Source: Macrostomum lignano | Lineage: Eukaryota | Length of the DNA: 64,000 nucleotides | Reading direction: 5' to 3' | NCBI GenBank assembly: GCA_002269645.1 | Contig: NIVC01003511.1 | Span: forward strand, 30,374 to 94,373 | Part shown: positions 4,171 to 47,913 of the stretch, piece by piece | Layout: each line of letters starts with the position of its first letter | How positions within the stretch are numbered: position 1 is the stretch's first letter | Program-made: the position numbers and the translations under genes | The notes under the pieces: generated by a model | Told to the model about the DNA's origin: nothing | Databases searched by the model: none | The model's input: only the letters and a program-made list of their open reading frames with translations

Positions 4171-4699
4171 AATGCTAGGCTGGGTTTTCAAATAGCTCGT
4201 TAAGCAGGTATATTTATAGCTACTGAGGCTTCCATATGAATAGGTTTTTATTTGCTGTCTAAATTAAACGAGTCAAATTTTCAACATTAAAACAGTACGT
4301 GCAGTGACAGAGACTAACGTCTACAAAACTATACGAGTACACCTCTTGTTTATAACTCGATTACGCTTATCATATTTATAACTCCGGTTAGCGCAGAGTT
4401 GTGCAGCTCCACAACGACACTGCCCTAATCTTTAACATTGCCGCCTATCTCCCTAGGGAAAGTGCGTCAGCGTTCAACTAACCCACACTACTATCCGCCT
4501 CAGTCCATTTAAACAAATTTCTCTGCACAGAGAGAGCTCAGAGATTTCAGTCCGTGACAGCGGGACTTTTGCTGCTGCTGCTGAGCTGGCAGGCAAATTC
4601 GCTTGAAGAAGAGCAAAGCACTCAGTTTGAAGCCGTGTGGAACAGCTGCGGCAGACAGCAGATCGGCAGAGAAGTGCTGCTAGGAGAAGCAGTGTAGCC

Positions 4700-7304
4700 A
4701 TGGCAACAGAGATGGAGCAGAAGCTGAGACAGGCGCTGGAGTCTGGAGACAGCGAGGAGCTGCAGCGACTGTGCGGTGAGGTCGGCAGCAACATCGAGCT
4801 GAAGGTGGGCGGGTTCGACAAGCAAGAATATCCCTTTAGGCAGCGTCGCCGAATGCCGCTGGCCCATCACTTGGCCTGCAAGCCGGTGAGTTCGTCCTGC
4901 CTGGAGCTGCTGATTGACAGATTCGGACCCGGCTGTCTGACATATATAAATGACAGTGATCAGACTCCAGTGCACTTGGCAGCCCAGCATCAGGACGAGT
5001 CTTGGATGAAGCTGGTTAAAGAGAAAGGAGGCAGAGGCTGTCTTAGAAATGTTGATCAGTGGGGGCAGACAGTCGCTCACTTTGCCGCTATGAACAGAAA
5101 AAGCAGTTCTTGTCTAAAGTGGCTGGTGAAGGAGCTCAGCGGCGACTATCTTACAGCTCCTGATAAAGACGGTGACACGGCCGTTCATTTGGCCGCTAGG
5201 CATAAGGGCATCGAGTCGCTGGAGTGGATCAAGAGACAGATCGGAACTGACTGCTTCCGGCTGAAGGGGTGGTTGGATAGAACAGCATTACACTTTGCTG
5301 CTCAGAAGTCTGACAATTCAAACCTGAAGTGGCTGGTGAAGGAGCTCGGCAGCGACTGTCTCACAGTTCCTGATGAATACGGGAGCACGGCCATCCATTT
5401 GGCCGCTCTGTATCAAGGCATCGAGTCGCTGGAGTGGATCAAGAGACAGATCGGAACTGACTGCTTTCGGCTGAAGGGATTTTGGGATAGAACAGCATTT
5501 CACAGTGCTGCCTGGAAGTCTGACAATTCAAATCTGAAGTGGCTGGTGAAGGAACTCGGCAGCGAGTGTCTCACAGTTCCTGACAAAGAAGGTGACACGG
5601 CCGTCCATTTGGCCGCTCAGCGGCAGCCAGTCGACTCTCTTCAGTTCATTTTTGATCAAATCGGAGCCGAAACGTTCAGCTTAAAGAACAACAAGGGCAA
5701 AACACCGGCTAATATTGTTGAAAGTGATCGGTGCCGAACAGACCAGTCAGCAAAGCGGGCCTTGATTCCCTCTACGCAGCGGCGGCTCGAAGCCTCTCGG
5801 CCTCCCGCTGGCAGTTCAGCGCCGACTGCCGCCTCAGCTGGGTGAGTCCTGACTGAGAACTGCAGCCTGACACTGAAAATACTAAAAATATTTTTGGTGA
5901 GAATTAATTGCGCTTTGATGATCGGCGCCCTGAAATTCTCATCAGAGCCACAGTAAAGTGAGGGCGTCACGAATTTGTCAGGGCAGCTCCTCATGGCGCT
6001 TCAACCTCCTGATGGAAGATATTCGCCTCATTCGCTTCCCACAGCGCTGCAGCTCCGCGTCCCCGCCCCCGAGCGCGCGAGCGGGTCAAGCCGTCTGGGC
6101 CGTCCGAGGGGGGACTTTCTGAGGAGACTGGGTGAGTCCACGCGGGGAGACACGGAAGGTTGGTGACACAAAGGCTGAGTGACTCCAAAGTACCAGTACT
6201 TAGGAAGCCCTAATCAACACAAAATTCATCGGATTCCTTCACCTCAATGTTTTCAGCGCCAAGAAGCAGCTGGACCCCAGCTTCACCGACTGGGACTTCA
6301 TCCTGCAGGACAGCAAGAAGCAGCTCATCGGCCGTGGTGCATTCGGTGAGGTGTACAAGGCCCTTACAGATCGTATCCAGACGGTGGCTGTCAAGGTGCT
6401 GCCCCTGAGCGGCACCGGAGAATCGGGGAAGTTGCAGAAAGCCGTCGAGATGGAGAAGCGGGGAGTTGAGATTCTCAAGCGACTCTCACATCCCAACATT
6501 GTGCAGTTCCTCAAGTGCGAGCAGAAGTCGGATGGGCTGTACATCTTCACCGAGCTGGTCTCGGGTCACAGCCTCTTTGAGCTGATGAAGCGTCAGAACA
6601 AGCCGTTCCAGGAGTCCTGGGTCAGGGACTTCTCCAGACAGGTGCGTCTCTGGGCTCTCTGGCATTGCCTGGCATGTGTGGAATCAGGTGGGATCAGTGT
6701 GGGATCAGTTTGCGATCAGTGTGTGCGATCAGTGTAGGATCAGTGTGGGATCAGTGTGGGTGAGATCCAGAATGGATAGATGCATTCTCATGACTGCTCA
6801 AAACTGCTACACCTGCAGATCTGCTCAGGCCTGAACTTCCTGCACTGCCAGCCGGAGGGCGCTATCTTGCACCGAGACATCAAAAGCGGAAATATAATGC
6901 TCACCAACGAGGGAGTCATCAAGCTGATCGACTTCGGTCTGGCCAGGGAGATATTCACCACCTGCGGCTTGAGCGCAGGCAACCCGCCAAAAGGCACCTG
7001 GCACTTCATGGCGCCCGAGCTGTTCATGGGCGAGGGTGACTCGATTCCGTACTCAGCCAAGACCGACGTGTGGGCCTTCGGCTGCACCGTGTATGAGCTG
7101 ACGGCCATGCAGCCTCCTGACGCGAACGTTCAGAAGTTCAGGATCGCCGTTCTGAGGTGCGGAGGGCGGGCGATGCCTCGGATTGCGGATGGGTTCTCAG
7201 CCGGCCTGAAGGACTTCTACCTCAGGTGCGTAGACTATGACCCGAGGGAGCGAGCGGACACTGCGGAGCTGCTGCGGCACAGCTTCCTGAGTGCCTCATC
7301 GTGA
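4700..7304 (+). CDS. Ankyrin-repeat + STE11/MAP3K-like Ser/Thr kinase, copy 1; join(4700-5841,6257-6641,6819-7304), 670 aa
   Basis: GT-AG introns with compatible phases (2 and 0) give 2013 nt. There are 8 full ankyrin repeats of about 35 aa (TPVHLAA, TAVHLAA, TALHFAA). The kinase has GRGAFGEVY, VAVK, HRDIKSGN, DFG, GTWHFMAPE and DVWAFG. Confidence 0.9.
6677..6762 (+). repeat. 11-bp GTGGGATCAGT repeat in intron 2 of kinase copy 1 (about 7 units)
   Basis: Visible tandem units. The equivalent intron of copy 2 has about 15 units. Confidence 0.85.
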
Positions 7305-12187: not shown

Positions 12188-13154
12188 TGACGAGGGCGAT
12201 GGCTCTGGTGGTGTCGGTCGCGCAAAGGTACATAACTTGGTAGCCTGGTCCGTCCAAACGACCTGTTGCGCCCTTCAGCGACTCCAGCTGGCAGGCCACA
12301 TCATCCGCGCCGAGTCGTACTGACCAGAGCCGGTGCAGGCCGGTGCTGCTGCTAACGCTACAGGCCACCCTATCGGCCGGGGCAGGCGCGCACTCGGCGC
12401 CTGCTGGTTGACGCCGGCGCCCCGGATTCGACCGGCGGCGTGGCGTTCATTCGCGACCTGGCCTTGAAGAGCGCCCTGCGTATTCTGTTGTTGTTGTTGG
12501 TAGCCTGGAAGCATGCAGGTCGGCTTTTCCATGCGGGTATACGGTTAATGAATAAGGTAGATGTCAACATCCTTGTTGTCGAAAGTGCCTGTAAGGTTGC
12601 CAGATGCTGCGAGAGCTTGGAACAGGTTGATATGAATAATGTGCAGGTTTACTGGTTGGTTCGCCGGAGGCGGATTGCCAATGATTTGGTTGCTGGTCGC
12701 AGTGTCATATTTCGGCTGGCCAGCAGGGTTCGCCCTCAGAGCCCCGCTCCTAGTTTGACACAGCGTTGCGAACGGCATTACTCGTTCCCAGAGCTATCCG
12801 AGCTCGCGGACTCGCCTCTGCGTCGATCGCCAACCGGGCGACGCCTGGGCAGCAGGTGGAAGACGATCTTCCACGCCCCGACGTAGGCTTCCAAATCGCT
12901 CTTTCCGAGGACGTTTTCCCACTCAGCCGAGAAACCCATGTACGGGGTCTTACCGGGGAGCCCGGCGCGAATCTCCTCGATGCTCCTCGAGCCGGAGTAG
13001 AAGGCTCGGTAGCGCCTACAGGGCGGCGTGGTCGGGCACGCTCAACGACCATGGGTGGGACAGCGGTCGCGCAGTGTCCCAGGAGATGGACACAAGCTTT
13101 GCCAGCGCGAGCTCAAGCTGGGCCTCGTCCTTGAAGGCGAGGATGACGCTGCCG
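12188..13154 (-). mobile_element. Internal fragment of a LOA/R1-type LINE (ORF1 C-terminus + APE N-terminus), same family as 43434-47913
   Basis: ORF 12545-12778 ([17 protein letters not shown]...HIIHINLFQALAAS) aligns with 44007 onward. Homology spans about 43560-44330 of the long copy. Confidence 0.9.
12249..12496 (+). mobile_element. 5'-truncated RTE-like LINE 3' end (248 bp) with a (GTT)n tail and a 12-bp TSD, inserted in the LOA fragment
   Basis: TTGGTAGCCTGG occurs at 12237-12248 and 12497-12508 and splits the PGYQ codons of the LOA APE. The insert translates LQRLQLAGHIIRAES, like the RTE C-terminal RRLxxxGHxxR motif. Confidence 0.8.
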
Positions 13155-14055
13155 CGGAATTTTCGTCTCTCGAGCCGTATCGAATGGTCTAGAAATCCAT
13201 GCAGAGTAGGCTGGAATGGAGAAAACTGAATTGTAGAAAAATGGGGTAGGTAACCGCGCGGGGACTGGATATACCCCAGCCAGCTCCGAGGAGCTACCCT
13301 CTGTCACAGTAAACAACAGAGAAGCTTTGGATTGCCGTCTTACCACAGGATTGCTTCCAGGCGAGGCCCCGGCAGGCCCCAGGTCAACACTGCAAGATCA
13401 GGGGGCGGGAGGCCGGCTGTAGGTTTGGGACCAGACGCCAGGTCAGAGTGACAGCTGACGCCCAAGCCCTCCTCCACAGAAGTGGCCCTTGAGAACAGTC
13501 AGCAGCCAACTACTCAGCAGCCACCTGCCCAGCAAAAAGGCAGCAGGGGGGATCTGTTCTCCCACAGCCAGGCCTGAGCGAAAGAGGAGGGAGAAACCTC
13601 CTCGGAAACGAAAAGCTGGCAGATGTCACTGAGTCCCTCGGTTTAAGTTGCCATTTCCCCCCCTCCCCCATTTGCTGTATAAATTAAACGAGTCAAATTT
13701 CCAAAATAACAACAAAACTCGGAATGCCACAGCCTAATGTTTACAGCGCAATGCGACTCTCAGGTAAAACTCCGGCTTATCTTATTCAGAACTCCGCTTA
13801 TCGCACAGTGGTGCTGCTGCATTCCGACACTGCCCTATACTTTAAGACTGCCGTGCCGCCTATTTTCGAAATGCAAGTGCGTCAGAGTTGAACCAAGACA
13901 TGCTACTTTTAAGGACAGATCACTTTTGCTGCTGCTGCTGAGCTGGCAGGCAAATTTGCTTGAAGAAGAGCAAAGCACTCAATTTGAAGCCGTGTGGAAC
14001 AGCTGCGGCAGACAGCAGATCCGCAGAGAAGCGCTGCTAGGAAAGAGAAACCGGC

Positions 14056-16730
14056 ATGGGGAACACTCGAAGTGTAGCCAAGGCAACAGAGATGGAGCGG
14101 AAGCTGAGAGCGGCGCTGGAGGCTGGAGACAGCGAGGAGCTGCAGCGACTGTGCGGTGAGGTCGGCAGCAACATCGAGCTGAAGGTGGGCGGCTTCGGAA
14201 TGCAAAACCTTTTCTTTAGAAAGCTTCTTAAAATGCCGTTGGCCCATCACGTGGCCTGCAAGCCGGTGAGTTCGTCCTGCCTGGAGCTGCTGATTGACAG
14301 ATTCGGACCCGGCTGTCTGACACATATAAATGACAGTGATCAGACTCCAGTGCACTTGGCAGCCCAGCATCAGGACGAGTCTTGGATGAAGCTGGTTAAA
14401 GAGAAAGGAGGCAGAGGCTGTCTGAGAATTGTTGATAAGTGGGGGCAGACAGTCGCTCACTTTGCCGCTATGAACAGAAAAAGCAGTTCTTGTCTAAAGT
14501 GGCTGGTGAAGGAACTCGGCAGCGACTGTCTCACAGCTCCTGATAAAGACGGTGACACGGCCGTTCATTTGGCCGCTAGGCGCTGGAGTGGATCAAGAGA
14601 CAGATCGGAACTGACTGCTTTCGGCTGAAGACAAAGTGTGATAGAACAGCATTTCACTTTGCTGCTCAGAAGTCCGACAGCTCAAATCTGAAGTGGCTGG
14701 TGAAGGAGCTCGGCAGCGACTGTCTCACAGTTCCTGACAAAGAAGGTGACACAGCCGTCCATTTGGCCGCTCTGTATCAAGGCATCGAGTCGCTGGAGTG
14801 GATCAAGAGACAGATCGGAACTGACTGCTTTCGGCTGAAGACAAAGTGTGATAGAACAGCATTTCACTTTGCTGCTCAGAAGTCCGACAGCTCAAATCTG
14901 AAGTGGCTGGTGAATGAGCTCGGCAGCGACTGTCTCACAGTTCCTGACAGAGACGGTGACACGGCCGTCCATTTGGCCGCTAAGCATCAGCCAGTCGATT
15001 CTCTTCAGTTCATTTTTGACCAAATCGGAGCCGAAATGTTCAGTTTGAAGAGCAACAGGGGCATAACACCGGCTGATGTTGTTGAGAGATTTTGGTTACT
15101 CAATGACCAGTCAGCAAAGCAGGCCTGGATTTCCTCCACACAGCGGCTGCTCGGAGCCTCTCAGCCTCACGCTGGGTGAGTCCTGGCAGAGAGATGCTGC
15201 ATGACTGACGCTAAAATGCTGAAAATATTTTTGGCGAAAATTCATTGCGCTTTGATGATCGGCGCCCTGAAATTCTCAGCAGCGCAGCAGTCAAGCAAGG
15301 GCGTCACGAATTTCTTGGGGCAGCTCCTCATGGCACCCCCAAACTTCCTATGGCATCCCCAATCTCTTCATGGCACCCCTAAACCATGCCCTGGCGCCCC
15401 AATTTCAAGGTGTTTTTGGAAGGTAAAAATATGACAGTACAGATGTCGGCATTTAAGGTGCGACTCAGTGAGTCCGCGCTTAAATATGGGGCCAGTGTAG
15501 GTGAAGCAGAGGGTTGTGCCGCGGAATGCTGAGTGACTCCAAAGTACTCCGAAAGCCTCAAACAACTCAAAATTTATTGAATTCCTTTACCTAATATTCC
15601 CAGCGCCAAGAAGCAGCTGGACCCCAGCTTTACCGACTGGGACTTCATTCTGCAGGACGAAAAGAAGCAGCTCATCGGCCTTGGTGGATTCGGTGAGGTG
15701 TTCAAGGCCCACACAGACCGCAACCAGACGGTGGCTGTCAAGGTGCTGCCCATGAGCCAAGCTGAGCAAGACGCAGAGGAACTGAAGATAAAAATTCTGA
15801 TGGAGAAGCGGGGAGTTGAGATCCTCAAGCGACTCTCGCATCCCAACATTGTGCAGTTCCTCAAGTGCGAGCAGAAGTCGGATGGGCTGTACATCTTCAC
15901 CGAGCTGGTCTCGGGTCACAGCCTCTTTGAGCTGATGCAGCGTCAGAACAAGCCGTTCAAGGAGTCCGGGGTCAGGGACTTCTCCAGACAGGTGCGTCTC
16001 TGGGCTCTCTGGCATTGCCTGGCATGGGTGGGGTGAGTGTGGGATGAGTGTGGGATGAGTGTGGGATGAGTGTGGGATGAGTTTGGGATGAGTGTGGGAT
16101 GAGTGTTGAATCAATGTGGGATCAGTGTGGGATCAGTGTGGGATCAGTGTGGGATCAGTGTGGGATCAGTGTGGGATCAGTGTGGGTGGGATCTGGAATG
16201 GCTAGATCCAACTTGATGACTGCTCAAAACTGCTCCACCTGCAGATCTGCTTAGGCCTGAACTTCCTGCACTGCCAGCCGCAGGGCGCCATCCTGCACCG
16301 TGACATCAAGAGCTCTAATGTGATGCTCACCAACAAGGGTGTCATCAAGCTGATCGACTTCGGTCTCGCCAAGGAGATCGTCGGCACCAGCGACCTGAGC
16401 GACGGCGTCGATCCCAAAGGCACCCTCTACTTCCTGGCGCCCGAGCTGTTCATGGGCGATGGCGAATCGATTCCGTACTCAGCCAAGACCGACGTGTGGG
16501 CCTTCGGCTGCACCGTGTATGAGCTGACGGCCATGCAGCCTCCTGACGCGAACGTTCAGCAGTTCCGGATCGCCGTGCTGAGGTGCGAAGGGCGAGCGAT
16601 GCCTCAGATTGCTGACGGGTTCTCAGCCGGCCTGAAGGACTTCTACCTCAGGTGCGTAGACTATGACCCGAGGGAGCGAGCGGACACCGCGGAGCTGCTG
16701 GGGCACAGCTTCCTGAGAGTCTCATCGTGA
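14056..16730 (+). pseudogene. Ankyrin-repeat + STE11-like kinase, copy 2; exons 14056-15175, 15604-15991, 16245-16730; 16-bp deletion at about 14580 frameshifts exon 1
   Basis: Paralogous to copy 1, including introns and upstream DNA (about 13670 vs 4250). It lacks cataagggcatcgagt relative to copy 1, giving a stop at 14628. The kinase motifs are intact (GLGGFGEVF, VAVK, HRDIKSSN, DFG, APE). The N-terminus is MGNTRS. Confidence 0.85.
16025..16190 (+). repeat. 11-bp GTGGGAT(G/C)AGT repeat in intron 2 of kinase copy 2 (about 15 units)
   Basis: The period is 11 bp. The 5' units carry GATGAG and the 3' units carry GATCAG. Confidence 0.9.
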
Positions 16731-16804: not shown

Positions 16805-17670
16805 TTTTGTTTATCTGATTGCCGTTTTTGTTTATCCGATTGCCCTTTTTTTATCCGATTGCCCATTTTGTTTATTCGATTGCCCTTTTGTTTATCCGAT
16901 TGCCCTTTTGTTTATCCGATTGCCCATTTTGTTTATCCGATTGCCGTTTGTGTTTATCTGATTGCCCATTTCGTTTATCCGAATGCCGTTTTTGTTTATC
17001 CGATTGCCCTTTTGTTTATCTGATTGCCCATTTCGTTTATCCGATTGCCGTTTTTGTTTATCCGATTGCCCTTTTGTTTATCCGATTGCCCATTTTGTTT
17101 ATCCGATAGCCGTTTGTGTTTATCTGATTGCCCATTTCGTTTATCCGATTGCCGTTTTTGTTTATCCGATTGCCCTTTTGTTTATCCGATTGCCCATTTT
17201 GTTTATCCGATAGCCGTTTGTGTTTATCTGATTGCCCATTTTGTTTATCCGATTGCCGTTTTTTATCCTATTGTCATTTTTGTTTATTCGATTGCCGTTT
17301 TTGTTTATTCGATTGCCGTTTTTTATCCGATTGCCGTTTTTGTTTATCCGATTGCCGTTTGTTTATCCGATTGCCGTTTTTTATCCGCGATTGCTGTTTT
17401 TGTTTATCCGATTGCCGTTTCTGTTTATTCGATTGCCGTTTTTTATCCGATTGCCGTTTGTGTTTATCTGATTGCCCATTTCGTTTATCCGATTGCCGTT
17501 TTTTATCCGATTGCAGTTTTTGTATATTCGATTGCCGTTTTTGTTTATTCGATTGCCGTTTTTGTTTATCCGATTGCCATTTTTGTTTATCCGATCGCCG
17601 TTTTTGTTTATTTGATTGTCGTTTTTGTTTATTCGATTGTCGTTTTTTATCCGATTGCCGTTTTTGTTAT
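16805..17670 (+). repeat. Minisatellite of about 21 bp (TTTGTTTATCCGATTGCCGTT) with a 104-bp higher-order period, downstream of the kinase copy 2 stop
   Basis: The ttgcccattt variant recurs at 17024, 17128 and 17232. Confidence 0.92.
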
Positions 17671-18601
17671 CCCAGTGTCATTTTTTTTATATAACTGTTT
17701 TGTTTTTTGAACTGCTCAGATTTGAATTTATTATCCATTTCTCTATCAATTTTCCTGCTGCTATCAGATGTTCGAATCAATTATCCAGTCATAGTTTTGT
17801 TTATTCAGCTGCGACCCGCAACTTAAATTTTGACTTCCGGGTTTGTTTTACTGGTTGCTCCTTTCACAATGAGACATTTTTGTGCTGACTTGAGTGCTAT
17901 TTCAGTTTTAAGCTGATCAAGGTTGATTTTGAAACTCTGGCACAAAGACAATCCCAATTCTCTAATCTACTCAAACTGCTCAATGCCTACTCCAGTGTAG
18001 TGTGAGCGTCTTGTGTTAATTTTTGAGTTCTATTAGCTAGTTGATTGTATTGTTGTCGATAATTAATTTGCTTATTTTAGTCACGCGTTTTTTCAATGTA
18101 CTTTTTGTCTCTTGAATAAAACAGATGAGTAGTTTCACCACCTTCGAGAGTCCTGCTTGTGTTGAGACTCGAAGAAAAAATCAACGCCGAACCCCATCTG
18201 CAGCGGTCCGCCTCAGTCCGTCCCAGAGCGAGCCAAGGTTCACGTAGTCGGGCCACTCACCCATGGCAAACAGGCTAACCGGGATCTGCACAAGCAGCGG
18301 GGAGCCGTAGCAGTCCTGCATCTGAAGCCGATTTCCTGGCTTCTCATCGATTCTGTCCAGCTTCCACTCGGACTCGTCCAGCATCTGCCAGCCGTCGCAG
18401 TCAATCCAGTGTGGAAAGATGATGAAGAACCAGAAAGCTCCCCCACTCAGACTCATCTAGGATGTCAACAACTCGTCTCGCCGTGGTCTTGAGCAGGATC
18501 TCCTCGAACGGCGGGTTGAGCACCCAGCCACCTTGATGCTGCATCAAGTGCTGAATCAAGGATTCGCTCGAACAGCAGGTCGATGCGGCGCACGCTGGCC
18601 C

Positions 18602-18800
18602 GCTGCTGACGCTGCAGGCACCTTACCGGTGGGGCAGGCCCGCACTCGACGTTTCGACTGCCTGCTGGCTGATGCCGGCGCCCCGGACACTGCCAGCGGT
18701 ACGTTCGTACGTTCGTGCCTTGAAACGCGCCCTTGTGACATTGTCCCACGATTGACTAGCTGACAATTTATTTTGTTGTTGTTGCTGTTGTTGTTGTTGG
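18602..18800 (+). mobile_element. RTE-like LINE 3' fragment with a (TTG)n tail, same family as 12249-12496
   Basis: gctgacgctgcaggc..ggggcaggc..cgcactcg..cctgctggctgatgccggcgccccgga aligns with 12345-12430. The tail is at about 18773-18800. No TSD found. Confidence 0.7.
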
Positions 18801-19605
18801 AGTACTTTGGTAGGTCATTGGGGTATTTTAGTTGGTCAGATCGGGATCATTTTGGTGTCTTGAGCGCTTCTTAGAATCCTCGTCAAGAGTAAATAAGAAA
18901 TTCAGTTCAAAGATGTTTTTGCTTCAAAAACGGAGCCGACAGCTCGCATTCGCATGTCGTCAAAGCAGAGGACTTGGCGCACTCTGTGTATTCATTAAAT
19001 GCAAATCAGACAGAAAAATCAAAAAAAGTTTTAAACTCTTTATCAGTCTAGAGCAGGTCCAAAATCACGCAGACCCAGCTCCAAGCAGTACAAACCGGTA
19101 CAGCTGGTCCAGTGTTGAGTTTGCCACAGGTGAGATGCTTTCAGCTGTGCCCAGCCAGTCTGCCGGCTCGCCCTCGCCCTCGCCGAGCCACAGCCTCACC
19201 ACGAAGTTGTACCTGCGCCAGTTCCACAGCCGGCCTGCATCGTAGAGCCAGCCGATCTCTCTCTGAGTCCAACTTGGTCGACTCAAGCTCATGGACTCAA
19301 TGTGGCACAGTGTTGGGATGCAATGGCACAGCACGCTGGGCAGGATGCCGCTTCTCCATACCTTTGGGTTTCTGTGAGTATCGTTTCCACTGTTGCCATG
19401 GTGATTAACTGTAGGTGGCTGGCGCTGCAAAACCGAATGCCAGACTGAGGCCAGGGTCGAACCTCGAGCGGCCAGGAATACGCCATCGCTCAGGCCGTGA
19501 CGCCTGTGGTCCTGCAACCAATCAGGGATCGGCTGGGGTTTGAGCTGGGGATTTGCTTGGGAGTCTGAGAATTGCCGCACTGAAGGTCTTTGATACAGGC
19601 ATTTT

Positions 19606-20012
19606 GCTGGCGCCCCTCTCTGCAGCTGGCGCCACTCTCTGTAGCTGGCGCCCCCTCTGTAGCTGGCACCCCTCTGTAGCTGGCGCCCCTCTGTAGCTGG
19701 CGCCCCCTCTGTAGCTGGCGCCCCTCTCTGCAGCTGGCGCCACTCTCTGTAGCTGGCGCCCCCTCTGTAGCTGGCACCCCTCTGTAGCTGGCGCCCCTCT
19801 GTAGCTGGCGCCCCCTCTGTAGCTGGCGCCCCTCTCTGCAGCTGGCGCCACTCTCTGTAGCTGGCGCCCCCTCTGTAGCTGGCGCCCCTCTCTGCAGCTG
19901 GCGCCACTCTCTGTAGCTGGCGCCCCCTCTGTAGCTGGCGCCCCTCTCTGCAGCTGGCGCCACTCTCTGTAGCTGGCGCCCCCTCTGTAGCTGGCGCCCC
20001 TCTCTGTAGCTG
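19606..20012. repeat. 17-19-bp GC-rich minisatellite (GCTGGCGCCCCCTCTGTA variants)
   Basis: Visible tandem units. The minus strand has no stop codon in any of the three frames. Confidence 0.92.
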
Positions 20013-20608
20013 AGCCAAATTTGCCAATTCTGCTGACTCCTGAGCACACACAAGTGGCACGCACTCATACAAACGCTCACACAGGGTGTACAACGGCTTT
20101 TTGACCTTCCAATCTTCAGGCATGTACATTGTCAGTGCCTTGGGGCTGGCCCTCATGGCTGTGAATCGCACGGCCACCCAGTGTGTCCAAGAGAGCCTCA
20201 TGCAGGACCCTTCCAACACATTTTACAAACACATTTTACCTGCCCAATTACAAAGTGGAACCTTCGCAGCTGAGAGACCGGTTTCACTATCAGCGAGTCG
20301 GTTGTCAGAGCTGCTCCGCCGAAAGTCAGCACCGCTTCCAGCTTCACTGTCAGCATCATCTTTGCTCTCTGCTGACTGCTCTCTGTCAAATATTCGCTCA
20401 GCAGGTCGTGTCTATGCGACAAAACGATGGTCGACTCCCAGCGGTGGGCGCTGGTGAGGTTCCGCCTGAGGCGCTCCCAGTTTTTACCGGCCGGAGTGGC
20501 GCCCATCGGCAGCCAGATGAAGATGAGCTGAGGCTGCATTATCCAAGCACAGCTGAGCAGGCTCACCTGTGATTGCAGTGGCTTTTGAGTCAAAAGAGTT
20601 ACAGTAAT

Positions 20609-20840
20609 CCTCTCCTCTCCTCTCCTCTCCTCTCCTCTCCTCTCCTCTCCTCTCCTCTCCTCTCCTCTCCTCTCCTTTCCTCTCCTCTCCTCTCCTCTCC
20701 TCTCCTCTCCTCTCCTCTCCTCTCCTCTCCTCTCCTCTCCTCTCCTCTCCTCTCCTCTCCTCTCCTCTCCTCTCCTCTCCTCTCCTCTCCTCTCCTCTCC
20801 TCTCCTCTCCTCTCCTCTCCTCTCCTCTCCTCTCCTCTCC
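20609..20840. repeat. (CCTCT)n pentanucleotide microsatellite, about 46 units
   Basis: Near-perfect polypyrimidine/polypurine tract. Confidence 0.98.
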
Positions 20841-22150
20841 CCTCCCCTCTCTCCTGTCAATTTTCGCCTCGCCTCTCCTTCATTCCATTGCCTCCTCTTC
20901 CTTCTATCCTTCGTCTGTATTCCCTTTGGCATCTCCTCTCGTTCCTCCTGTGTTCCTCAGTCATGGTCTGGATTCTCGACCCCTTGAGGTAAAAAGTTTC
21001 TCGACCCCTGATTGAAACAAAGATGTAAAGCAGCTACAGTTAAATGTAATCCATCTCATTTTCTCAATGCCTAACTTTATCAGTCTTAATTACCATGCTG
21101 AATGCTAACAAATGCATACACAGAATGACATTATGAACCCATCATGTCCATTCACCAATTCGTGAAATCGCAAGTCGGTCCCGCCAGACCCATCGGAATC
21201 TGCACTGCGCACTCGCGGCAGCACAAAGTGAGCAACATTGGGCACGGGGCTGCTCATGGATGCAGCTCTGCTGGCAACGTCTTGCAGATGTCGAACTTCG
21301 AGTCGCCTGCCCGAAGGCGAGGTCAAGCGCCAAGTACCTGTGCTGAAATGGGCCAGCGTGGATGGCGGTACCACCTGCGGCAGCTGGTCCTGCTTGGTCA
21401 GCGACAGCCGAGCAAGCAGCCCCTGCAGACTGCTGAGGCTGTCGCTGATGGAGCTGGTGAGTCTGCGGCAAATTTGAGATGTTGGCGAAATGCGACTGGC
21501 GATTTTTTGGTCACCGCCTTGAGTTGCTACCCGGGGTTTTGATGGCTCGGGAGTGTTCGGCTGCCCGTCCGTAGCATTTGCTTCTGTCATGCCAAAGAGA
21601 TGATTTAAGTGCGAAATATTGCGTCTCAGATAGAATAATCACATTCTTGTTTTTCATTTTTCATTTGATTTATTGTACATTTAGTTTCATTCAGTGTGAG
21701 TTTTATCATCACATGGGTCTTCATTAGGGGTTTATTATGGTGGTCTTCGACTTTGTTTTATCATTGTTTTTAGGGACTTTTCGGTTGTCATCAGGGCTCT
21801 TGGTTATCTGCGTTCAATACGCAATTTTTAATTCAGAAATGAATGCTCACCAGAACTACTGTTAGTAGCACTTCGATTGCCACTATTGGTCTCAGGCTGG
21901 TGCGAATCGATTTCCAACGAAATGGTCAAAGTTTCAGTAGCCCAGATGCAAAGCAGCAGAGCGACTGAGGCAGCGACCAGCTTTGATGTCGGCATTTGCT
22001 GCTTTTTCCCGATGCAAAAGCAATCAAATGTCACGACCAACAAATCTTTAGACTTGTAGAATCGATAATATCATCGGTAATTACCTTGAAACATTATCTC
22101 TCTGGAGAAGGCTGCACTGCTCATCAATATGTCTATGGCCTGAAGCTTGT

Positions 22151-22460
<310 letters not shown>

Positions 22461-22461
<1 letters not shown>

Positions 22462-25190
22462 CCCTTCTACGGTGCTGCGGGTGCCGGTGGCGGCTTCAGT
22501 GGCGGCGGCGGCGGCGGGTCCTGCTGCTCCGGAAGCGGCTGCAACTTCACTGCTGTTGCTTCTTCTTCTTCTTCTTCAGACATGCGCACCGCGATCGACG
22601 AGGGTCGGAGCTGAGGACCGCAAGGGGGGGGGGGGCACGGGGTGCCGAACTGGTGGGTGCGACGACCACACAGGGCCGGGCACGCACAGAGCCAGTGCTC
22701 CACGGTTTCAGGTTCCAGGTTGCAGAAGGGGCAGGAGGAGTCCGCCGACGCGTCAAGTAAGGCGTGGTAAGCGCGGAGCGACCGGCAGTGGCCAGCCCGG
22801 AGTTGGGCGAGCAGGCGCTGGTCGGCCCGGCAGGTGACGGCGGCGCGGTCCTGAGCATGACTAACGAGTTCGTAGGCGGCGGACGTGCGCGGGTGGCTAG
22901 GATGGTCAACGATATGGCGCTGACAGGCAGCCGCGGCCGCGCGGAAGGAAATAGGAGACGAGGGGTCGGCAGGCGACTCCCCTCCTTGGCCAGGTGGTCG
23001 GCGAGCTCGTTCCCGGGAATTCCGCAGTGCCCCGGGATCCACTGAACCACGACGTCCGTGTCAATGCGGGCGAGCGAGGTCAGGGCGCGGCCGATCGAGC
23101 GGTTGGAGTTAGACAGGGCCACCACCAGGCTTTGACTGTCGGTGCAGAAGACGAAACGGCGAATAGAAACAGAATCGGCAGCCCAGGCGAAGGCGGCGAC
23201 TTCCTCATCGAACGAGGAGGTAGCAGGGGCGCCGCGGAAGGAAGCCGAGTGCAAGATGGATGGGTGGGCCGGGTCGCTTTGGGTGACAACGAAGGCGTGG
23301 CCGCCGGCCGAGACCCCTTTCTGGGCGAGGCCGTCAGAGTAGATGACCAGGGAGGTGCCTGGAGGGCTGTGCAGGTGGTCACGGACCCGGTCCAAGGCGC
23401 GGGCGCGGAAGTCCGAGTCGGAGAGCACCAACGCTGGACCGAGGGAGTGGTCGAACACGCGGGTGCGATCAGGCGGTGGAGGAGGAATCACGGCATCGGC
23501 AGGGTAGAGCGGAAGGCGGGGGGCCATGGTCAACGGAAGACGCTCCAAGAGGCGAGAAGCGGCCTGGCGCCAGCTGGATCTGACCAGGCGGTGCTGTACC
23601 GTACCATCCGCGGCACGTCGTCGAGGGTGATTCGGCGGGAGGCGAAGGGCCTTCTCCCAGGAGCGGGCGAGCAGGCGCAGGCTGTGGGTTCTGTAGCTGG
23701 GAACGTCGGCCTCCAGTCTGATGGCGTCCACCGGGGACGATTGGAGTTGGCCCGTGATGATGCGGAGCGCCCGGTTTTGACAGCGATCGAGGTCATCAAT
23801 TAGCGGGACTCGCTCAGCCAGGGCTGCCAGGCGGGGGCAGCATAGTCCAGCACTGAGCGGATCAGCGCGTTGAAGACCAAGCGGAGTTTATCTTTGCGCC
23901 AGCCCCAGTCCTGGTTGGCAAGCGCGGCGAGCACGCGACAGCGGCTGCGGGCCTTCGAAACGAGGTCCCTGACGTGAGGGCCAAAGCTGAGGGTGCGGTC
24001 CAGGACGACGCCGAGAAAGCGCGGGTTGGCGTCAAAGGGCAGAGACGAGCCGTTGAGAAGCAGCTGTGGTTGAAGTGACGCCTCCGCGGTCAAGTTGGAG
24101 AAGAGCGACACCACGCTCTTGGACGGATTTAGCGTCATCTTCATGCGCGCACTCCACTCAGCAGCAGCGTCGAGTCCAGCCTGGAGGGACTCCGTGGCGG
24201 AAGCGACCGACGAGTGCTACGCGCGGATGGTGAGGTCGTCGGCGTAGAGTGAGGGGGTGATCGCGGGAGGCATGGTGCGAGCGACGCCATCGATGAAGAG
24301 CCGAAAAAGGAACGGGGCGATCACCGAACCTTGGGGCAGGCCTTGGCGGAGAGGCAGAGGGTGGCTCAAGGCGCCATTGACGTTGACGCGGGCGGAGCAG
24401 TCGCATAGGAAGGCGAAACACCATCTCACCAGCGGGGCCGGGGCCTGGAAGTCCAGCATGATGTGGACGAGCATTTGTCTCCACACACGGTCGAACGCTC
24501 TACTGTAGTCGAGCAGGGCGACGAGTGTCCGAAGGTGTGGACGAAGCTGGAAGCCGTCGCTGATGGCTTGGACAAGCTCGAGGACGAGGTCCTTACAGGA
24601 GCGGAGGCGGCGGAAGCCAGCTTGGCAGTGATGGATCCAGCCGTGACTCTCAGCGAGATCGTAAAGCCGGATGAAGATGATCCGCTCAAGGAGTTTGACC
24701 ACACAGGATGTGAGGCTAACTGGGCGGAAGCTGTCGACGCGGCAGGCCGGCTTACCGTGCTTGAGCAGCGGGATGATGGTGGCGCGGCGCCAGTGAGCCG
24801 GGACGGTCCCGGTCAGAAGCGAGATGATGCAAGGCTGAGCGGGGCGGTTAGCGGGCGTAGCCGGATCGGCCGGATCAGCCAGGGGTGGCGGCCGGCCAAG
24901 GTGGTGATGCTGGAGTTGGGAGGAGCATCGCGGTCAGGATGGAGCGAACAGGTCCAGGAAGGATTCCGGGCGTAACGCGAGGCCCCGGAGCAGGAGCAGT
25001 GGCACGCCGAATCGCATCCCGGGACGGAGCAGTGAAGGTGGCAAGCACCACGGCGGAAAGCTTTGCCGCTTTGCCGCAGCGAAAGCAGACGGTGCATCTG
25101 CAGTGCTCGGTCGCGGCGGAGGCAGGGTACGGAGCCGGAGCTGCCTGCGGTCTGATGGCGTCCGACGGCCGGTGAAGAAGGCAGAGCCAG
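22461..25190 (-). mobile_element. 5'-truncated I/Ingi-group LINE: RT + RNase H + CCHC zinc knuckle, disabled
   Basis: RT motifs FRPVSLTSCVVKLLERI, LDYSRAFDRV, GLPQGSVIAP and YADD. RNase H motifs IYSDG, FCTDSQS and WIPGHCGIPGNELADHLAK. Knuckle CPFC..ETVEHWLCAC. There is an in-frame TAG at 24217-24219 and frameshifts near 23810, 22980 and 22630. No APE domain; the 5' boundary is approximate. Confidence 0.9.
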
Positions 25191-27540: not shown

Positions 27541-28610
27541 CTGCAAACCGTTGACCCTCCGCTGAGTCACTCTTGACTGGAAATTTGCGTCTAGCTTTCT
27601 GACCTGTTTACACTAAAAATAAACTCTAACTAACAAAAAGTCAAAATAGAAACGTGAAATCTTTTTAAATAAACTCTGATAGCTTAAGCCTTGTAAAAGC
27701 TTTTGAGAGGTTTAGTATCCAATACAAGCATTCAAGCAAGCAAGCATACAAACCTTAGAGATTTAGTATAGGTAGATTGCAACGTTCCATTACTTTGTTT
27801 AGAAGCTTCCGTCATGGCGCACAAGTCAGACGCATTTTCCGCCGAGTTGCTCTGTCCCCAAGCTTCCATCATAGAAAACCGCCACCTTTAGAGCGTTGGC
27901 AGATCGATTGACTTCAGCTCACTACACTGCAAATGGCACAAGGTCCTGCTTACTTTATAAAATGTAATCAAGCTTCGATGAATCCACTTTAGTTACCTAG
28001 GGATGTTAAATAATGGAAGTTTATTAGATTCGCACAAAAATCTTTTTAAGCCACGTGTTAATTACCAAAAAGTAAGACTAGGGAGCCGTTGTGTTATCAC
28101 ATAAGTTTAATTAGAAGCAGCAATTATTAAGGAGTATAATTTCGAACAACAAATCAGTCACTTGTCTTCGGTTTCAAATTCGGATTTCGGACCAGCCGCA
28201 GTTCCCTGGTCACTCGGACGCCGTGCCAGGCCGAACCGTACGCCAGCTGCTGCTCTTCGACGCGTCGTCGGACGGCCGATGATCCGAACGTCTGCCGATT
28301 GATGAGCAACGAGAACAGCAGCAGGGCCAGGACAAATGTTGTTAGAATTGTTGAGGCCGAGATTAAATTCCATTTATTGTGAATTAATGCTAGCGGGTTT
28401 TCAGTTTTTGTACCAGCAATTCTAACCATTGCTTGGTTATTGATTGATCGATGCAGCTCAGTGTGCTGAAGTATAAAACGTACGTCGTAAAGGAACTTCA
28501 GAATGTCAGTCTTCTCTTGAACTTTCCTATTGTGTTTTTACCATAGACTATTTGAAAAGAGAATTAAGATGGTTTAAAGTCATTTTACATTCCGGATTAA
28601 AGTTGTTTTG

Positions 28611-29988
28611 GTCAAGGAGGGTCATTGTGGACTCATAAGCGTGATTGTAGAGTCAGGAGTGTCATTGTGGAGTCAAGAGTGTCATTGTGGAGTTAGGAGT
28701 GTTATTGTGGAGTCAGGAGTGTCATATTGGAGTCAGGAGTGTCATTGTGGAGTCAGGAGTGTTATTGTGAAGTCAGAAGTGTCATTGTGGAGTCAGAAGT
28801 GTCATTGTGGAGTCAGGAGTGTCATTGTGGAGTCAGGAGTGTCATTGTGGAGTCAGGAGTGTCATTGTGGAGTCAGGAGTGTCATTGCGGAGTCAGGAGT
28901 GTCATTGTGGAGTCAGGAGTGTCATTGTGGAGTCAGGAGTGTCATTGTGGAGTTAGGAGTGTCATTGTGGAGTCAGGAGTGTCATTTTGGAGTCAAGAGT
29001 GTCATTGAGGAGTCAGAAGTGTCATTGTAGAGTCAGAAGTGTCATAGCGGAGTCAGAAGTGTCATTGTGAAGTCAGGAGTGTCATTGTGGAATCAGGAGT
29101 GTCATTGTGGAGTCAGGAGTGTCATTGTGAAGTCGGGAGTGTCATTGCGGAGTCAGAAGTGTCATTGTGGAGTCAGAAGTGTCATTGCGGAGTCAGAGGT
29201 GTCATTGCGGAGTCAGGAGTGTCATTGTGGAGTCAGGAGTGTCATTGTGGAGTCAGGAGTGTCATTGTGGAGTCAGGAGTGTCATTGTGGAGTCAGGAGT
29301 GTCATTGTGGAGTCAGGAGTGTCATTGTGGAGTCAGGAGTGTCATTGTGGAGTCAGGAGTGTCATTGTGGAGTCAGGAGTGTCATTGTGGAGTCAGGAGT
29401 GTCATTGTGGAGTCAGGAGTATCATTGTGGAGTCAGGAGTGTCATTGTGGAGTCAGGAGTGTCATTGTGGAGTCAGGAGTGTCATTGTGGAGTCAGGAGT
29501 GTCATTGTAGAGTCAGGAGTATCATTGTGGAGTCAGGAGTGTCATTGTGGAGTCAGGAGTGTCATTGTGGAGTTAGGAGTGTCATTGAGGACTCAGGAGT
29601 GTTTTTTTGGAGTCAGAAGTGTCATTGTGGAGTCAGGAGTGTCATTGTGGAGTCAGGAGTGTCATTGTGGAGTCAGGAGTGTCATTGCGGAGTCAGGAGT
29701 GTCATTGTGGAGTCAGAGGTGTCATTGTGGAGTCAGGAGTGTCATTGTGGAATCAGGAGTGTCATTGTGGAGTCAGGAGTGTCATTGTGGAGTCAGGAGT
29801 GTCATTGTGGAGTCAGGAGTGTCATTGTGGAGTCAGGAGTGTCATTGTGGAGTCAGGAGTGTCATTGTGGAGTCAGGAGTGTCATTGTGGAGTCAGGAGT
29901 GTCATTGTAGAGTCAGGAGTGTCATTGTGGAGTCAGGAGTGTCATTGTGGAGTCAGGAGTGTCATTGAGGAGTCAGATCTGTCATTGT
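28611..29988. repeat. 20-bp tandem satellite GTCATTGTGGAGTCAGGAGT, about 69 copies
   Basis: The unit stays in register across about 1.37 kb, with substitutions only and no indels. Confidence 0.97.
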
Positions 29989-30829
29989 ACGGTGGAATAT
30001 CATCGTGGGCTTCAACTCAAGGGGGAGGTGCTAATTGCAAGCTCAAAGTGGTTGGCAAATGGCTCTAAGCAAAATTTATTGATTTTTCATTCATATACTG
30101 ATTTTACTAACGACGAGAATATTGGCAATATATTAAATGATTGACAGAAAATACTAAATTTTGTAATCTAACCAATATCCAGTCTTTAACTTGTCATGAC
30201 ATGTATTTGCAAGTCCTAGAAAACAACTCAAAGGTCGTTTCGGACCTAGAAAACAGGTTGTTGCTAAAGATCTGCGAGCATACGACGTATCAGGCAGTTC
30301 ATTTCTATCGGAAATTTTCTAGACATTAATAGCAGCATTTCAACGAATGGTCACGCAATGGAAATGTACAGCCGCATTTTATTGGGTTTTACCCAGTAAT
30401 TTGCCACCCGAACCTGCCTCTCTCTCTCTATCTTAAGTCTCTTCAAGCGAAAAACTTGTCTGTCCAAACACCCCCTTTTGCATACACACAGCTGAACTAC
30501 CAAATTAGCCCCTTAGCCCCTCAACCCTACCCCCCCGCTGAGCGCGAGCAGTCACGTGATGTTCTAAAACAACACCGTACTTGCCTAGGCATAGCCAGAC
30601 AGAGCTACAGGGGTATGACAAGTTAAACAAAATATATCAATGTATTTCTCGGTCCTGCCCGCCCCTCTCTCGGCACACAAAATGTAGCTCTTCACTTTAA
30701 ATAGTTTAAGAGTTGAAGTTTTGCTAGCTTTTTGCGTGCATTTTGTGCAGTCTTTTTTCTGTTAGAGCTCTTCATAAGGCTTGAGTCTCAAAACAGCGCG
30801 AAAGTACCTGTTGCTCTCTGTTGAGTAAA

Positions 30830-43266: not shown

Positions 43267-47913
<4,647 letters not shown>

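What the first reader, a model, noticed from the sequence alone, without database searches (positions are those of the whole stretch)
18181..19330. Hidden PCIF1/CAPAM-like NPPF methyltransferase domain missed by the ORF track
Seen: a frame without an ATG gives QHQGGWVLNPPFEEILLKTTARRVVDILDESEWG. Removing one G from a G5 run (18440-18444) continues it into AFWFFIIFPHWIDCDGWQMLDESEWK. Upstream pieces RRIDLLF, GSVFEAKTSLN and LWNWRRY..EGEG match, in order, PCIF1 DTDGYFGS, VSFECFASPLN and VWCLLRRY..EGTG from memory. Known: PCIF1 makes cap m6Am using an NPPF catalytic motif, and related domains occur outside canonical PCIF1. Inferred: a divergent, WW-less paralog with an unrelated N-terminal region, so its RNA or DNA substrate may differ. 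An RTE fragment (18602-18800) sits amid the domain, either intronic or inactivating.
Basis: partly seen in the sequence, partly recalled or inferred. Interest (0 to 1): 0.72.

Follow-up and report, generated by a model that had tools for sequence, protein, structure and literature searches.

The report
Truncated PCIF1-like methyltransferase gene relic
The window holds only the last third of a flatworm (Macrostomum) PCIF1/CAPAM-like RNA methyltransferase gene, frameshifted and cut off at a retrotransposon fragment, so it is an ordinary gene relic and not a hidden working enzyme.

Summary
The core observation is real. The minus strand of 18549..18184 encodes LMQHQGGWVLNPPFEE...ESEWG, a one-base frameshift at the G5 run (18440-18444), then AFWFFIIFPHW...GVRR and a TGA stop. 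Stitched together, it matches Pfam PF12237 (PCIF1) above the curated cut-off. It is 72-76% identical to an intronless, WW-less, 361-aa PCIF1-like protein of Macrostomum lignano, whose predicted fold matches the human and zebrafish CAPAM crystal structures.

Only residues 246-361 of that protein have a counterpart in the window. A family profile searched against all six frames of the 64 kb finds nothing for the first two thirds of the protein (helical domain, strands before beta4, and the RY, FASPLN and FPDTD..FGS motifs).

RRIDLLF is the antisense reading of a non-LTR retrotransposon fragment (18550-18800, plus strand, (TTG)n tail) that meets the gene fragment head-to-head at 18549|18550. The other two pieces score as noise and have no homologues.

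Low dN/dS (0.2-0.3) shows the fragment was coding until recently, or is a recent partial copy of a coding gene.

Verdict: an unannotated, non-functional relic of a known family. Interest is low.

The parts
18181..18183 (-). TGA stop codon that ends the PCIF1-like reading frame
   Evidence: Direct reading. It lies 5 codons beyond the stop position of P0001 in the protein alignment.
18184..18439 (-). Post-frameshift coding remnant: (G)AFWFFIIFPHWIDCDGWQ...SLFAMGEWPDYVNLGSLWDGLRRTAADGVRR. It equals P0001 residues ~282-361 (beta5 to the C-terminus).
   Evidence: tblastn 63% identity. Family HMM positions 260-332, E 9.4e-14. It keeps the near-invariant P290, W292, D294, L301 and G325.
18440..18444 (-). 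G5 homopolymer (C5 on the plus strand) carrying a +1 frameshift relative to the G4 of the M. lignano genes
   Evidence: DNA alignment. Deleting one base gives a continuous 121-codon frame. Mutation or assembly error cannot be told apart here.
18445..18549 (-). Pre-frameshift coding remnant: LMQHQGGWVLNPPFEEILLKTTARRVVDILDESEW. It equals P0001 residues 246-280 (beta4, catalytic loop, following helix). Homology to the intact genes starts abruptly at 18549.
   Evidence: tblastn 87% identity. blastn to L001 and L002 both start at 18549. Family HMM positions 224-259, E 1.3e-10.
18506..18517 (-). NPPF catalytic-motif codons
   Evidence: Aligned to the NPPF of human PCIF1 (6IRV) through P0001.
18550..18800 (+). 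5'-truncated, internally deleted non-LTR retrotransposon fragment. It carries a remnant of the RT C-terminal region (..DSLEQQVDAAHAG..) and a (TTG)n tail at 18773-18799. It abuts the gene fragment head-to-head, and ATCAAG occurs on both sides of the junction.
   Evidence: 18602-18687 matches window 12348-12426 (77%, E 1e-12). 18560-18600 matches L001 12304-12264, which encodes ..ETWTLTDSLEQQVDAA...
18801..19330 (.). Sequence with no detectable coding homology.
   Evidence: No Pfam hit. No family-HMM hit. No homologue at E<=1 for the ORFs on either strand among 5.8 billion proteins.
12249..12498 (+). Sister copy of the same retroelement 3' end, with a (TTG)n tail. It is a clean insertion flanked by the 10-bp target-site duplication GGTAGCCTGG (12239-12248 and 12499-12508). 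This shows the family is mobile and inserts as short 5'-truncated pieces.
   Evidence: The flanks are collinear with 44334-44274 and 44284-43828 of the intact element in the window. TSD read directly.

Best explanation
Window 18181-18549 (minus strand) is a non-functional relic of a compact, WW-less PCIF1/CAPAM-like adenine-N6 methyltransferase gene. That family is multi-copy in Macrostomum flatworms.

Only the last third of the gene survives: beta4 with the NPPF catalytic loop through to the stop codon. It carries a +1 frameshift in a G5 run. Its 5' end is cut at 18549|18550, where it meets, head-to-head, a 5'-truncated non-LTR retrotransposon fragment (18550-18800).

The helical domain, the first Rossmann strands and every conserved motif upstream of beta4 are absent from the whole 64-kb window. 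The locus therefore cannot make a methyltransferase.

Shown: homology, its extent, the frameshift, the identity of the retroelement fragment and the position of the junction.

Inferred, on origin:
- The fragment was under coding constraint until recently.
- Either a once-intact gene lost its 5' part in a retroelement-associated deletion or rearrangement (about 45% of the relic scenario), or the fragment is a recent partial copy of an intact gene elsewhere in the same genome (about 55%). The second route could be a 5'-truncated retrocopy joined to the retroelement cDNA by twin priming or template switching, or a DNA-level partial duplication.
For: Family membership:
- PF12237 is hit above the gathering cut-off, but only for profile positions 98-163 of 176.
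- The closest protein is P0001, M. lignano BOX15_Mlig030305g1: 361 aa, intronless, 72% identical over its residues 246-361 only.
- P0001 itself is a bona fide CAPAM relative. It matches PDB 6IRV at E 5.8e-11 across the FASPLN, FPDTD..FGS, NPPF and PEW motifs. Its AF2 model has pLDDT 88.9, and the top six Foldseek PDB hits are all CAPAM, E down to 5e-14, TM 0.63-0.65.

Extent of the fragment:
- blastn to two independent M. lignano loci (L001, L002) starts at exactly the same window base, 18549, and runs to 18211 at 79-81% identity.
- A family HMM run with filters off on all six frames hits only HMM positions 224-332. Nothing matches positions 1-223 anywhere in 64 kb.

Defects and junction:
- The frameshift is one extra G relative to both paralogues.
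- 18550-18800 is a retroelement 3' fragment with a (TTG)n tail. A sister copy at 12249-12498 has a 10-bp TSD.

Constraint and context:
- dN/dS against L001 and L002 is 0.18-0.30, and 0.05 for the 36 codons around NPPF at dS ~0.9. There are no in-frame stops, and every near-invariant family residue in the covered part is kept.
- There is no synteny with the M. lignano loci: the downstream F-box gene is absent.
Against: - The G5 frameshift could be a homopolymer assembly error.
- The 18549|18550 junction could in principle be an assembly join. Neither can be checked without reads.
- No target-site duplication or clear poly(A) tail was found, so the route of origin stays open.
- The low dN/dS and the lack of other lesions mean the sequence does not look like an old pseudogene.
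- The source genome was not available, so neither an intact parent copy nor expression could be looked for.
Confidence: 0.85

Rival explanations
1. A complete but divergent, multi-exon, WW-less PCIF1 paralogue is hidden between about 18.1 and 19.3 kb (or up to 21.6 kb). The upstream exons would be RRIDLLF, GSVFEAKTSLN and LWNWRRY..EGEG, and the retroelement would be intronic.
For: - The pieces occur in the right order on the right strand.
- CAG trinucleotides that could act as splice acceptors lie just upstream of LMQH.
- The fragment shows coding constraint.
Against: - None of the pieces scores against PF12237 or the family HMM.
- RRIDLLF is retrotransposon antisense.
- The pieces lie in different frames separated by stops. 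Their spacing (about 97, 112 and 24 codons) is far from the 34, 35 and 10 residues of P0001.
- The relatives are intronless.
- The 18832-19489 ORFs have no homologues at all.
Confidence: 0.03
2. The frameshift is an assembly error. The fragment is then expressed as a short C-terminal polypeptide (ATG at 18544-18542, about 120 aa) or as the 3' exon of a chimeric transcript. It would act non-catalytically, for example by competing with the intact paralogues for a partner or an RNA.
For: - One lesion only, located in a homopolymer.
- An in-frame ATG sits three codons from the homology start.
- dN/dS is low and the conserved residues are intact.
- The M. lignano copy L002 also carries a mid-gene frameshift in a long-read assembly, so such errors or lesions are common in these data.
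Against: - Low dN/dS is equally expected for a recent copy of a constrained gene.
- A piece running from beta4 to the C-terminus, without beta1-3, is unlikely to fold by itself (model).
- There is no evidence of a promoter or of transcription.
Confidence: 0.07
3. Assembly chimera. The real genome holds an intact gene, and the assembler joined its 3' third to an unrelated repeat at 18549|18550.
For: - The junction lies at a repeat (the retroelement fragment) in a region full of minisatellites.
- The coding part looks healthy.
Against: - The junction has short microhomology typical of real rearrangements or retroelement events.
- A second, independent lesion (the frameshift) is present.
- The same retroelement family demonstrably inserts as short fragments nearby.
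Confidence: 0.05

Closest known systems
Macrostomum lignano BOX15_Mlig030305g1 (PAA48317.1, P0001) and its near copies Mlig031925g1 (P0182) and UPI0007A1BEC6 (P0183)
   Same: - 72-76% amino-acid and 79-81% nucleotide identity over the last 116 codons.
- Same motifs: GGWVLNPPFEEILL, FWFF..P.W.DCDGWQ, QDCYGSP, SLFAMGE.
   Different: - The window copy has no counterpart of residues 1-245, carries a +1 frameshift, ends 5 codons later, and lies in a different genomic context with no F-box neighbour.
- It is about 20% diverged at the DNA level. It is therefore either an older paralogue or comes from another Macrostomum species (other window genes are also only 79-87% identical to M. lignano proteins).
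Vertebrate PCIF1/CAPAM, the cap-specific m6Am methyltransferase (PDB 6IRV-6IS0)
   Same: - Same family (PF12237) and the same NPPF catalytic loop after beta4.
- The intact paralogue's predicted fold, helical domain plus Rossmann domain, superposes on CAPAM.
- In human CAPAM the catalytic loop is N553-C557 (review PMC8287941).
   Different: - Canonical PCIF1 is about 700 aa with an N-terminal WW domain that binds the RNA polymerase II CTD (PMC4738411). The Macrostomum subfamily is about 360 aa without a WW domain.
- The window holds only a third of even that.
Compact PF12237-only proteins of giant viruses and protists (e.g. Cafeteria roenbergensis virus E3T4I2, 362 aa; Hokovirus; Tetraselmis virus 1; salmon gill poxvirus)
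   Same: - Same size class and the same architecture without a WW domain. Foldseek E down to 8e-16, TM 0.71 to the CroV protein.
- 2,168 cluster representatives match P0001 at E<=1e-3, many of them 300-400 aa.
   Different: Sequence identity is only 13-21%. Those are intact genes, whereas the window copy is a fragment.
MTase domains in DIRS1-type retrotransposon polyproteins (PCIF1 clade, reported as catalytically degenerate; PMC4738411)
   Same: Same clade of MTases. Association with mobile DNA was considered because the fragment abuts a retroelement.
   Different: - NPPF and the other conserved residues are intact here.
- The neighbour is a non-LTR element fragment on the opposite strand, not a DIRS polyprotein.
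- P0001 is a stand-alone gene.

Membership tests
PCIF1/CAPAM family (Pfam PF12237) | Significant match to the family profile | tested here: met
   34.5 bits against a cut-off of 31.1, E 1.9e-8, covering only profile positions 98-163 of 176. Own family HMM: E 9e-14 and 1e-10.
PCIF1/CAPAM family (Pfam PF12237) | NPPF catalytic motif following beta4 | tested here: met
   GGWVLNPPF at 18506-18532. It aligns to the NPPF of 6IRV through P0001.
PCIF1/CAPAM family (Pfam PF12237) | Complete Rossmann MTase core, including the conserved motifs N-terminal of beta4 (RY, E.FASPLN, FCS.FPDTD..FGS.G.FF) | tested here: not met
   No match to HMM positions 1-223 in any of the six frames of the 64-kb window. tblastn with P0001 residues 1-245 is empty.
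PCIF1/CAPAM family (Pfam PF12237) | Helical domain that forms the cap/RNA pocket together with the MTase domain | tested here: not met
   Present in the model of the intact paralogue (helices 2-126; whole-chain match to 6IRV/6IRW). Absent from the window.
PCIF1/CAPAM family (Pfam PF12237) | N-terminal WW domain (canonical PCIF1 only) | tested here: not met
   P0001 has PF12237 only, and the window has no N-terminal part at all. Many family members lack a WW domain, so this excludes 'canonical PCIF1' but not the family.
PCIF1/CAPAM family (Pfam PF12237) | Intact open reading frame with a start codon | tested here: not met
   +1 frameshift at 18440-18444. The frame opens after a stop at about 18623 inside retroelement antisense sequence. 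The only ATG is 3 codons into the fragment.
PCIF1/CAPAM family (Pfam PF12237) | SAM-dependent N6-methylation of cap-adjacent Am | not testable with these tools
   Biochemistry is needed. It has not been shown even for the intact Macrostomum paralogues.
   ..DSLEQQVDAAHAG.. matches the RT-tail ORF in L001 (..ETWTLTDSLEQQVDAA..). (TTG)n lies at 18773-18799. The sister copy has the same tail.
   A clean 10-bp TSD flanks the sister copy at 12249-12498. None was found around 18550-18800 or around the gene-plus-retroelement unit; shared 7-9-mers are at chance level.
   No full-length copy of this family is in the window or the loci, and no repeat library is at hand. The two long elements in the window carry RNase H and belong to other families.
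Processed (retro)pseudogene | 5' truncation, poly(A) tail, TSD, loss of introns | tested here: inconclusive
   5' truncation: yes. Introns: uninformative, because the parent family is intronless. Poly(A): only AATAAA-like signals and an A8 run about 490 nt after the stop. TSD: not found.

The most novel reading that the evidence does not exclude
The G5 frameshift is an assembly error, and the fragment is expressed as a ~120-aa polypeptide running from beta4 to the C-terminus, or as the 3' exon of a chimeric or trans-spliced transcript. It would then act as a non-catalytic modulator of the intact compact CAPAM-like enzymes. Those enzymes have expanded in Macrostomum and might modify the caps of particular RNA classes.
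Probability: 0.04. Interest if true: 0.4.

Novelty: new member of a known kind. Interest (0 to 1): 0.15.

Why it matters
For this window it matters little. It adds one unannotated, truncated copy to a gene family that Pfam already recognises, and it should be annotated as a pseudogene or gene fragment, not as a methyltransferase.

The wider context is modestly useful. Macrostomum carries at least four groups of intronless, WW-less, NPPF-intact CAPAM-like genes. No paper in the held library connects PCIF1 with this genus. Their substrates are unknown, and the intact copies, not this relic, are the ones worth testing.

The locus also gives a tidy example of a gene fragment joined head-to-head to a 5'-truncated non-LTR element.

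Tried and rejected
- **Upstream exons.** Pfam and a filter-free family HMM on all six frames, plus tblastn with the intact paralogue, found nothing for the N-terminal two thirds.
- **Other coding content in 18832-19489.** The ORFs on both strands were searched against 5.8 billion proteins, with no hit at E<=1.
- **DNA homology upstream of 18549.** A lenient local alignment gives only gappy noise.
- **Target-site duplications.** Searched around the retroelement and around the combined unit; only chance-level 7-9-mers turned up.
- **Poly(A) or 3'-UTR homology.** No alignable UTR. A-rich stretches only, so this is inconclusive.
- **Synteny with the two M. lignano loci.** Tested with the F-box neighbour and tblastx of the flanks; none found.
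- **DIRS1-type MTase domain.** Considered and rejected: the motifs are intact, the relatives are stand-alone genes, and the neighbouring element is a non-LTR type.
- **Structured RNAs.** Rfam at gathering thresholds finds nothing in the whole window.
- **Source species.** It could not be pinned down. The best protein identities to M. lignano are 79-87%. The genus is clear, the species is not.

Full report
**What is in the sequence**

- QHQGGWVLNPPFEEILLKTTARRVVDILDESEWG lies at 18440-18541, with NPPF at 18506-18517.
- AFWFFIIFPHWIDCDGWQMLDESEWK lies at 18361-18438 in the adjacent frame and runs on to ...LRRTAADGVRR and a TGA at 18181-18183.
- The two frames meet at a G5 run (C5 on the plus strand, 18440-18444).

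A DNA alignment to the closest intact gene shows GAG-CGGGGAGCT in that gene against GAGTGGGGGAGCT in the window. That is exactly one extra base, and removing one G gives an uninterrupted 121-codon frame.

**Is it PCIF1-like?**

Yes.
- The stitched peptide hits Pfam PF12237 at 34.5 bits (curated cut-off 31.1), E 1.9e-8. The hit covers only profile positions 98-163 of 176.
- A search of 5.8 billion proteins returned one hit, Macrostomum lignano BOX15_Mlig030305g1 (P0001, 361 aa, E 4e-48).
- P0001 matches human and zebrafish PCIF1/CAPAM chains at E about 6e-11 across the FASPLN, FPDTD..FGS, NPPF and P(E/D)W motifs.
- An AlphaFold model of P0001 has mean pLDDT 88.9. Its six best PDB matches are all CAPAM structures, with E down to 5e-14 and TM 0.63-0.65 over the whole chain.
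- P0001 has no WW domain.

So the family assignment holds, and so does the "WW-less paralogue" idea for the gene family.

**How much of the gene is present?**

Only the last third.
- P0001 is encoded by an intronless 1,086-bp gene (L001:10001-11086).
- tblastn of P0001 against the window aligns residues 246-283 (87% identity) and 281-361 (63%), and nothing else.
- blastn aligns L001 10734-11068 to window 18549-18211 at 79%.
- A second M. lignano locus (L002, P0182) aligns from exactly the same window base, 18549, to 18211 at 81%.
- I built an HMM from 23 family members and searched all stop-to-stop segments of all six frames of the 64 kb with filters off. Only two segments hit, covering HMM positions 224-259 (E 1.3e-10) and 260-332 (E 9.4e-14). 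Every other segment has E>7.

The multiple alignment shows two things. The fragment keeps every invariant or near-invariant residue in the part it covers (W253, N256, P257, P258, F259, A268, P290, W292, D294, L301, G325). It lacks all of those upstream (R175, Y176, E206, F208, S210, P211, N213, F224-F228, D232, G236, G239, F241, F242).

In the model the fragment starts just before beta4 (strand 251-255). It lacks the helical domain and the preceding Rossmann elements. Such a piece cannot be a methyltransferase.

RRIDLLF (18570-18590) is the antisense reading of a retrotransposon remnant.
- On the plus strand, 18550-18800 reads ..DSLEQQVDAAHAG.. and ends in (TTG)n at 18773-18799.
- 18560-18600 matches L001 12304-12264. 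That stretch lies in an ORF reading ..AETWTLTDSLEQQVDAAPTGLMRAVFKIGYEQVTN.., a typical non-LTR RT C-terminal region.
- 18602-18687 matches window 12348-12426 (77%, E 1e-12).
- The sister copy at 12249-12498 has the same (TTG)n tail. It is a clean insertion with a 10-bp target-site duplication (GGTAGCCTGG) into an antisense copy of the 43.3-47.8 kb element.

GSVFEAKTSLN (18905-18937) and LWNWRRY..EGEG (19170-19229) behave as chance matches.
- They lie in different frames separated by stops, and their spacing is unlike that of the intronless relatives.
- They score nothing against Pfam or the family HMM.
- The ORFs that contain them, on either strand, have no homologue at E<=1.

The retroelement is real but spans 18550-18800. 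It marks the truncated edge of the gene fragment and does not interrupt a complete domain. The RTE-clade label was not tested.

**State and age of the fragment**

- Pairwise dN/dS against the two M. lignano genes is 0.18-0.30 (dS 0.6-0.9). It is 0.05 for the 36 codons around NPPF. The two M. lignano copies compared with each other give 0.28-0.47 on few substitutions.
- Apart from the single frameshift there are no stops.
- Most of the divergence therefore accumulated under coding constraint. Either truncation is recent, or the fragment is a recent partial copy of an intact gene elsewhere in its genome.
- There is no synteny with the M. lignano loci. In both of those an F-box gene follows the PCIF1-like gene, and it is absent here.
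- I found no target-site duplication and no convincing poly(A) tail.
- The two fragments meet 5'-end to 5'-end with their 3' ends pointing outwards, and ATCAAG occurs on both sides of the join. This fits a retroelement-associated deletion. It fits equally well a twin-priming or template-switch chimera between a retroelement cDNA and a PCIF1-like mRNA. I cannot decide between them.

**Caveats**

The G5 frameshift could be a homopolymer error. The L002 copy in the long-read M. lignano assembly also has a mid-gene frameshift and is annotated from an internal Met. The junction could be an assembly join. Neither would restore the missing two thirds within this window.

**Context**

- The window is from a Macrostomum genome, but perhaps not the annotated M. 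lignano reference. Its ankyrin-kinase ORF is at best 79-87% identical to M. lignano proteins.
- M. lignano has at least four groups of PF12237-only genes: Mlig030305/031925, Mlig000263 (a triple tandem fusion of 1,283 aa), Mlig015920, and A0A1I8HAP9/A0A1I8JIN4. The window fragment is 72-76% identical to the first group and about 45% to the others.
- An exhaustive HMMER search with P0001 finds 2,168 cluster representatives at E<=1e-3, many of 300-400 aa.
- Structurally similar compact proteins occur in giant viruses such as CroV, Hokovirus, Tetraselmis virus and pithovirus-like viruses, and in a poxvirus, salmon gill poxvirus.
- The literature places PCIF1 as an ancient eukaryotic clade that is usually WW-fused, with degenerate derivatives in DIRS1 retrotransposons (PMC4738411). 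In human CAPAM the NPPF loop is N553-C557 (PMC8287941).
- No held paper links PCIF1 to Macrostomum.

**Verdict**

It is a 5'-truncated, frameshifted relic abutting a retrotransposon fragment, not a hidden divergent enzyme. It is an ordinary finding, and interest is low.

Noticed in passing
window 4631-7301 and 14041-16727 (+): Tandemly duplicated genes encoding ankyrin repeats followed by a protein kinase domain. The best hits are M. lignano ankyrin-kinase proteins at only 79-87% identity, which suggests a large, fast-evolving family and/or a non-reference Macrostomum species.
   Followed up: partly
window 43267-47821 (+); antisense 5' fragment at 12188-13154: Near full-length non-LTR retrotransposon with an ORF1-like ORF and an ORF2 carrying Exo_endo_phos_2, RVT_1 and RNase_H. 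A second, antisense partial copy at 12.2-13.2 kb is itself interrupted by the 250-bp (TTG)n-tailed element with a 10-bp TSD.
   Followed up: partly
window 22550-24933 (-), with (AGT)n at 22256-22461: Another non-LTR retroelement (RVT_1 and RNase_H in separate frames, so degraded) next to a 69-copy trinucleotide array.
   Followed up: no
window 16805-17690, 19606-20012, 20608-20855, 28578-30065: Dense minisatellites bracket the relic: a 21-nt unit x43, a 19/56-nt unit x22, (TCCTC)x50, and a long array that is open in several frames and reads ...SGVSLWSQECHCGVRSVIVE... The long ORFs the scanner lists there are repeat translations, not genes.
   Followed up: no
L002 9148-10555 (M. lignano NIVC01000382.1): The M. 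lignano copy annotated as a 184-aa protein (BOX15_Mlig031925g1) is a full-length homologue of P0001 (89.5% nt identity) with a mid-gene frameshift. The annotation starts at an internal Met. It is either a pseudogene or a long-read indel error.
   Followed up: partly
L001 230-2627 (-) (M. lignano NIVC01004180.1): AT-rich ORFs with DNA_pol_B_2 (organellar/viral, protein-primed type) and Endonuclease_7 matches lie about 7 kb upstream of the intact PCIF1-like gene. This may be a Polinton/Maverick- or virus-like insertion. Whether it is linked to the PCIF1-like gene is unknown.
   Followed up: no
window 30785-31414 (+): An exon-like ORF with a Bestrophin (PF01062) match, E 4.5e-22. It is probably part of a real multi-exon gene.
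   Followed up: no
M. lignano proteins P0002/P0184/P0185 (BOX15_Mlig000263g2/4/6): A 1,283-aa product made of three nearly identical tandem copies of the compact PCIF1-like unit, each with NPPF. It is either a true triple fusion or three tandem genes merged by annotation.
   Followed up: no
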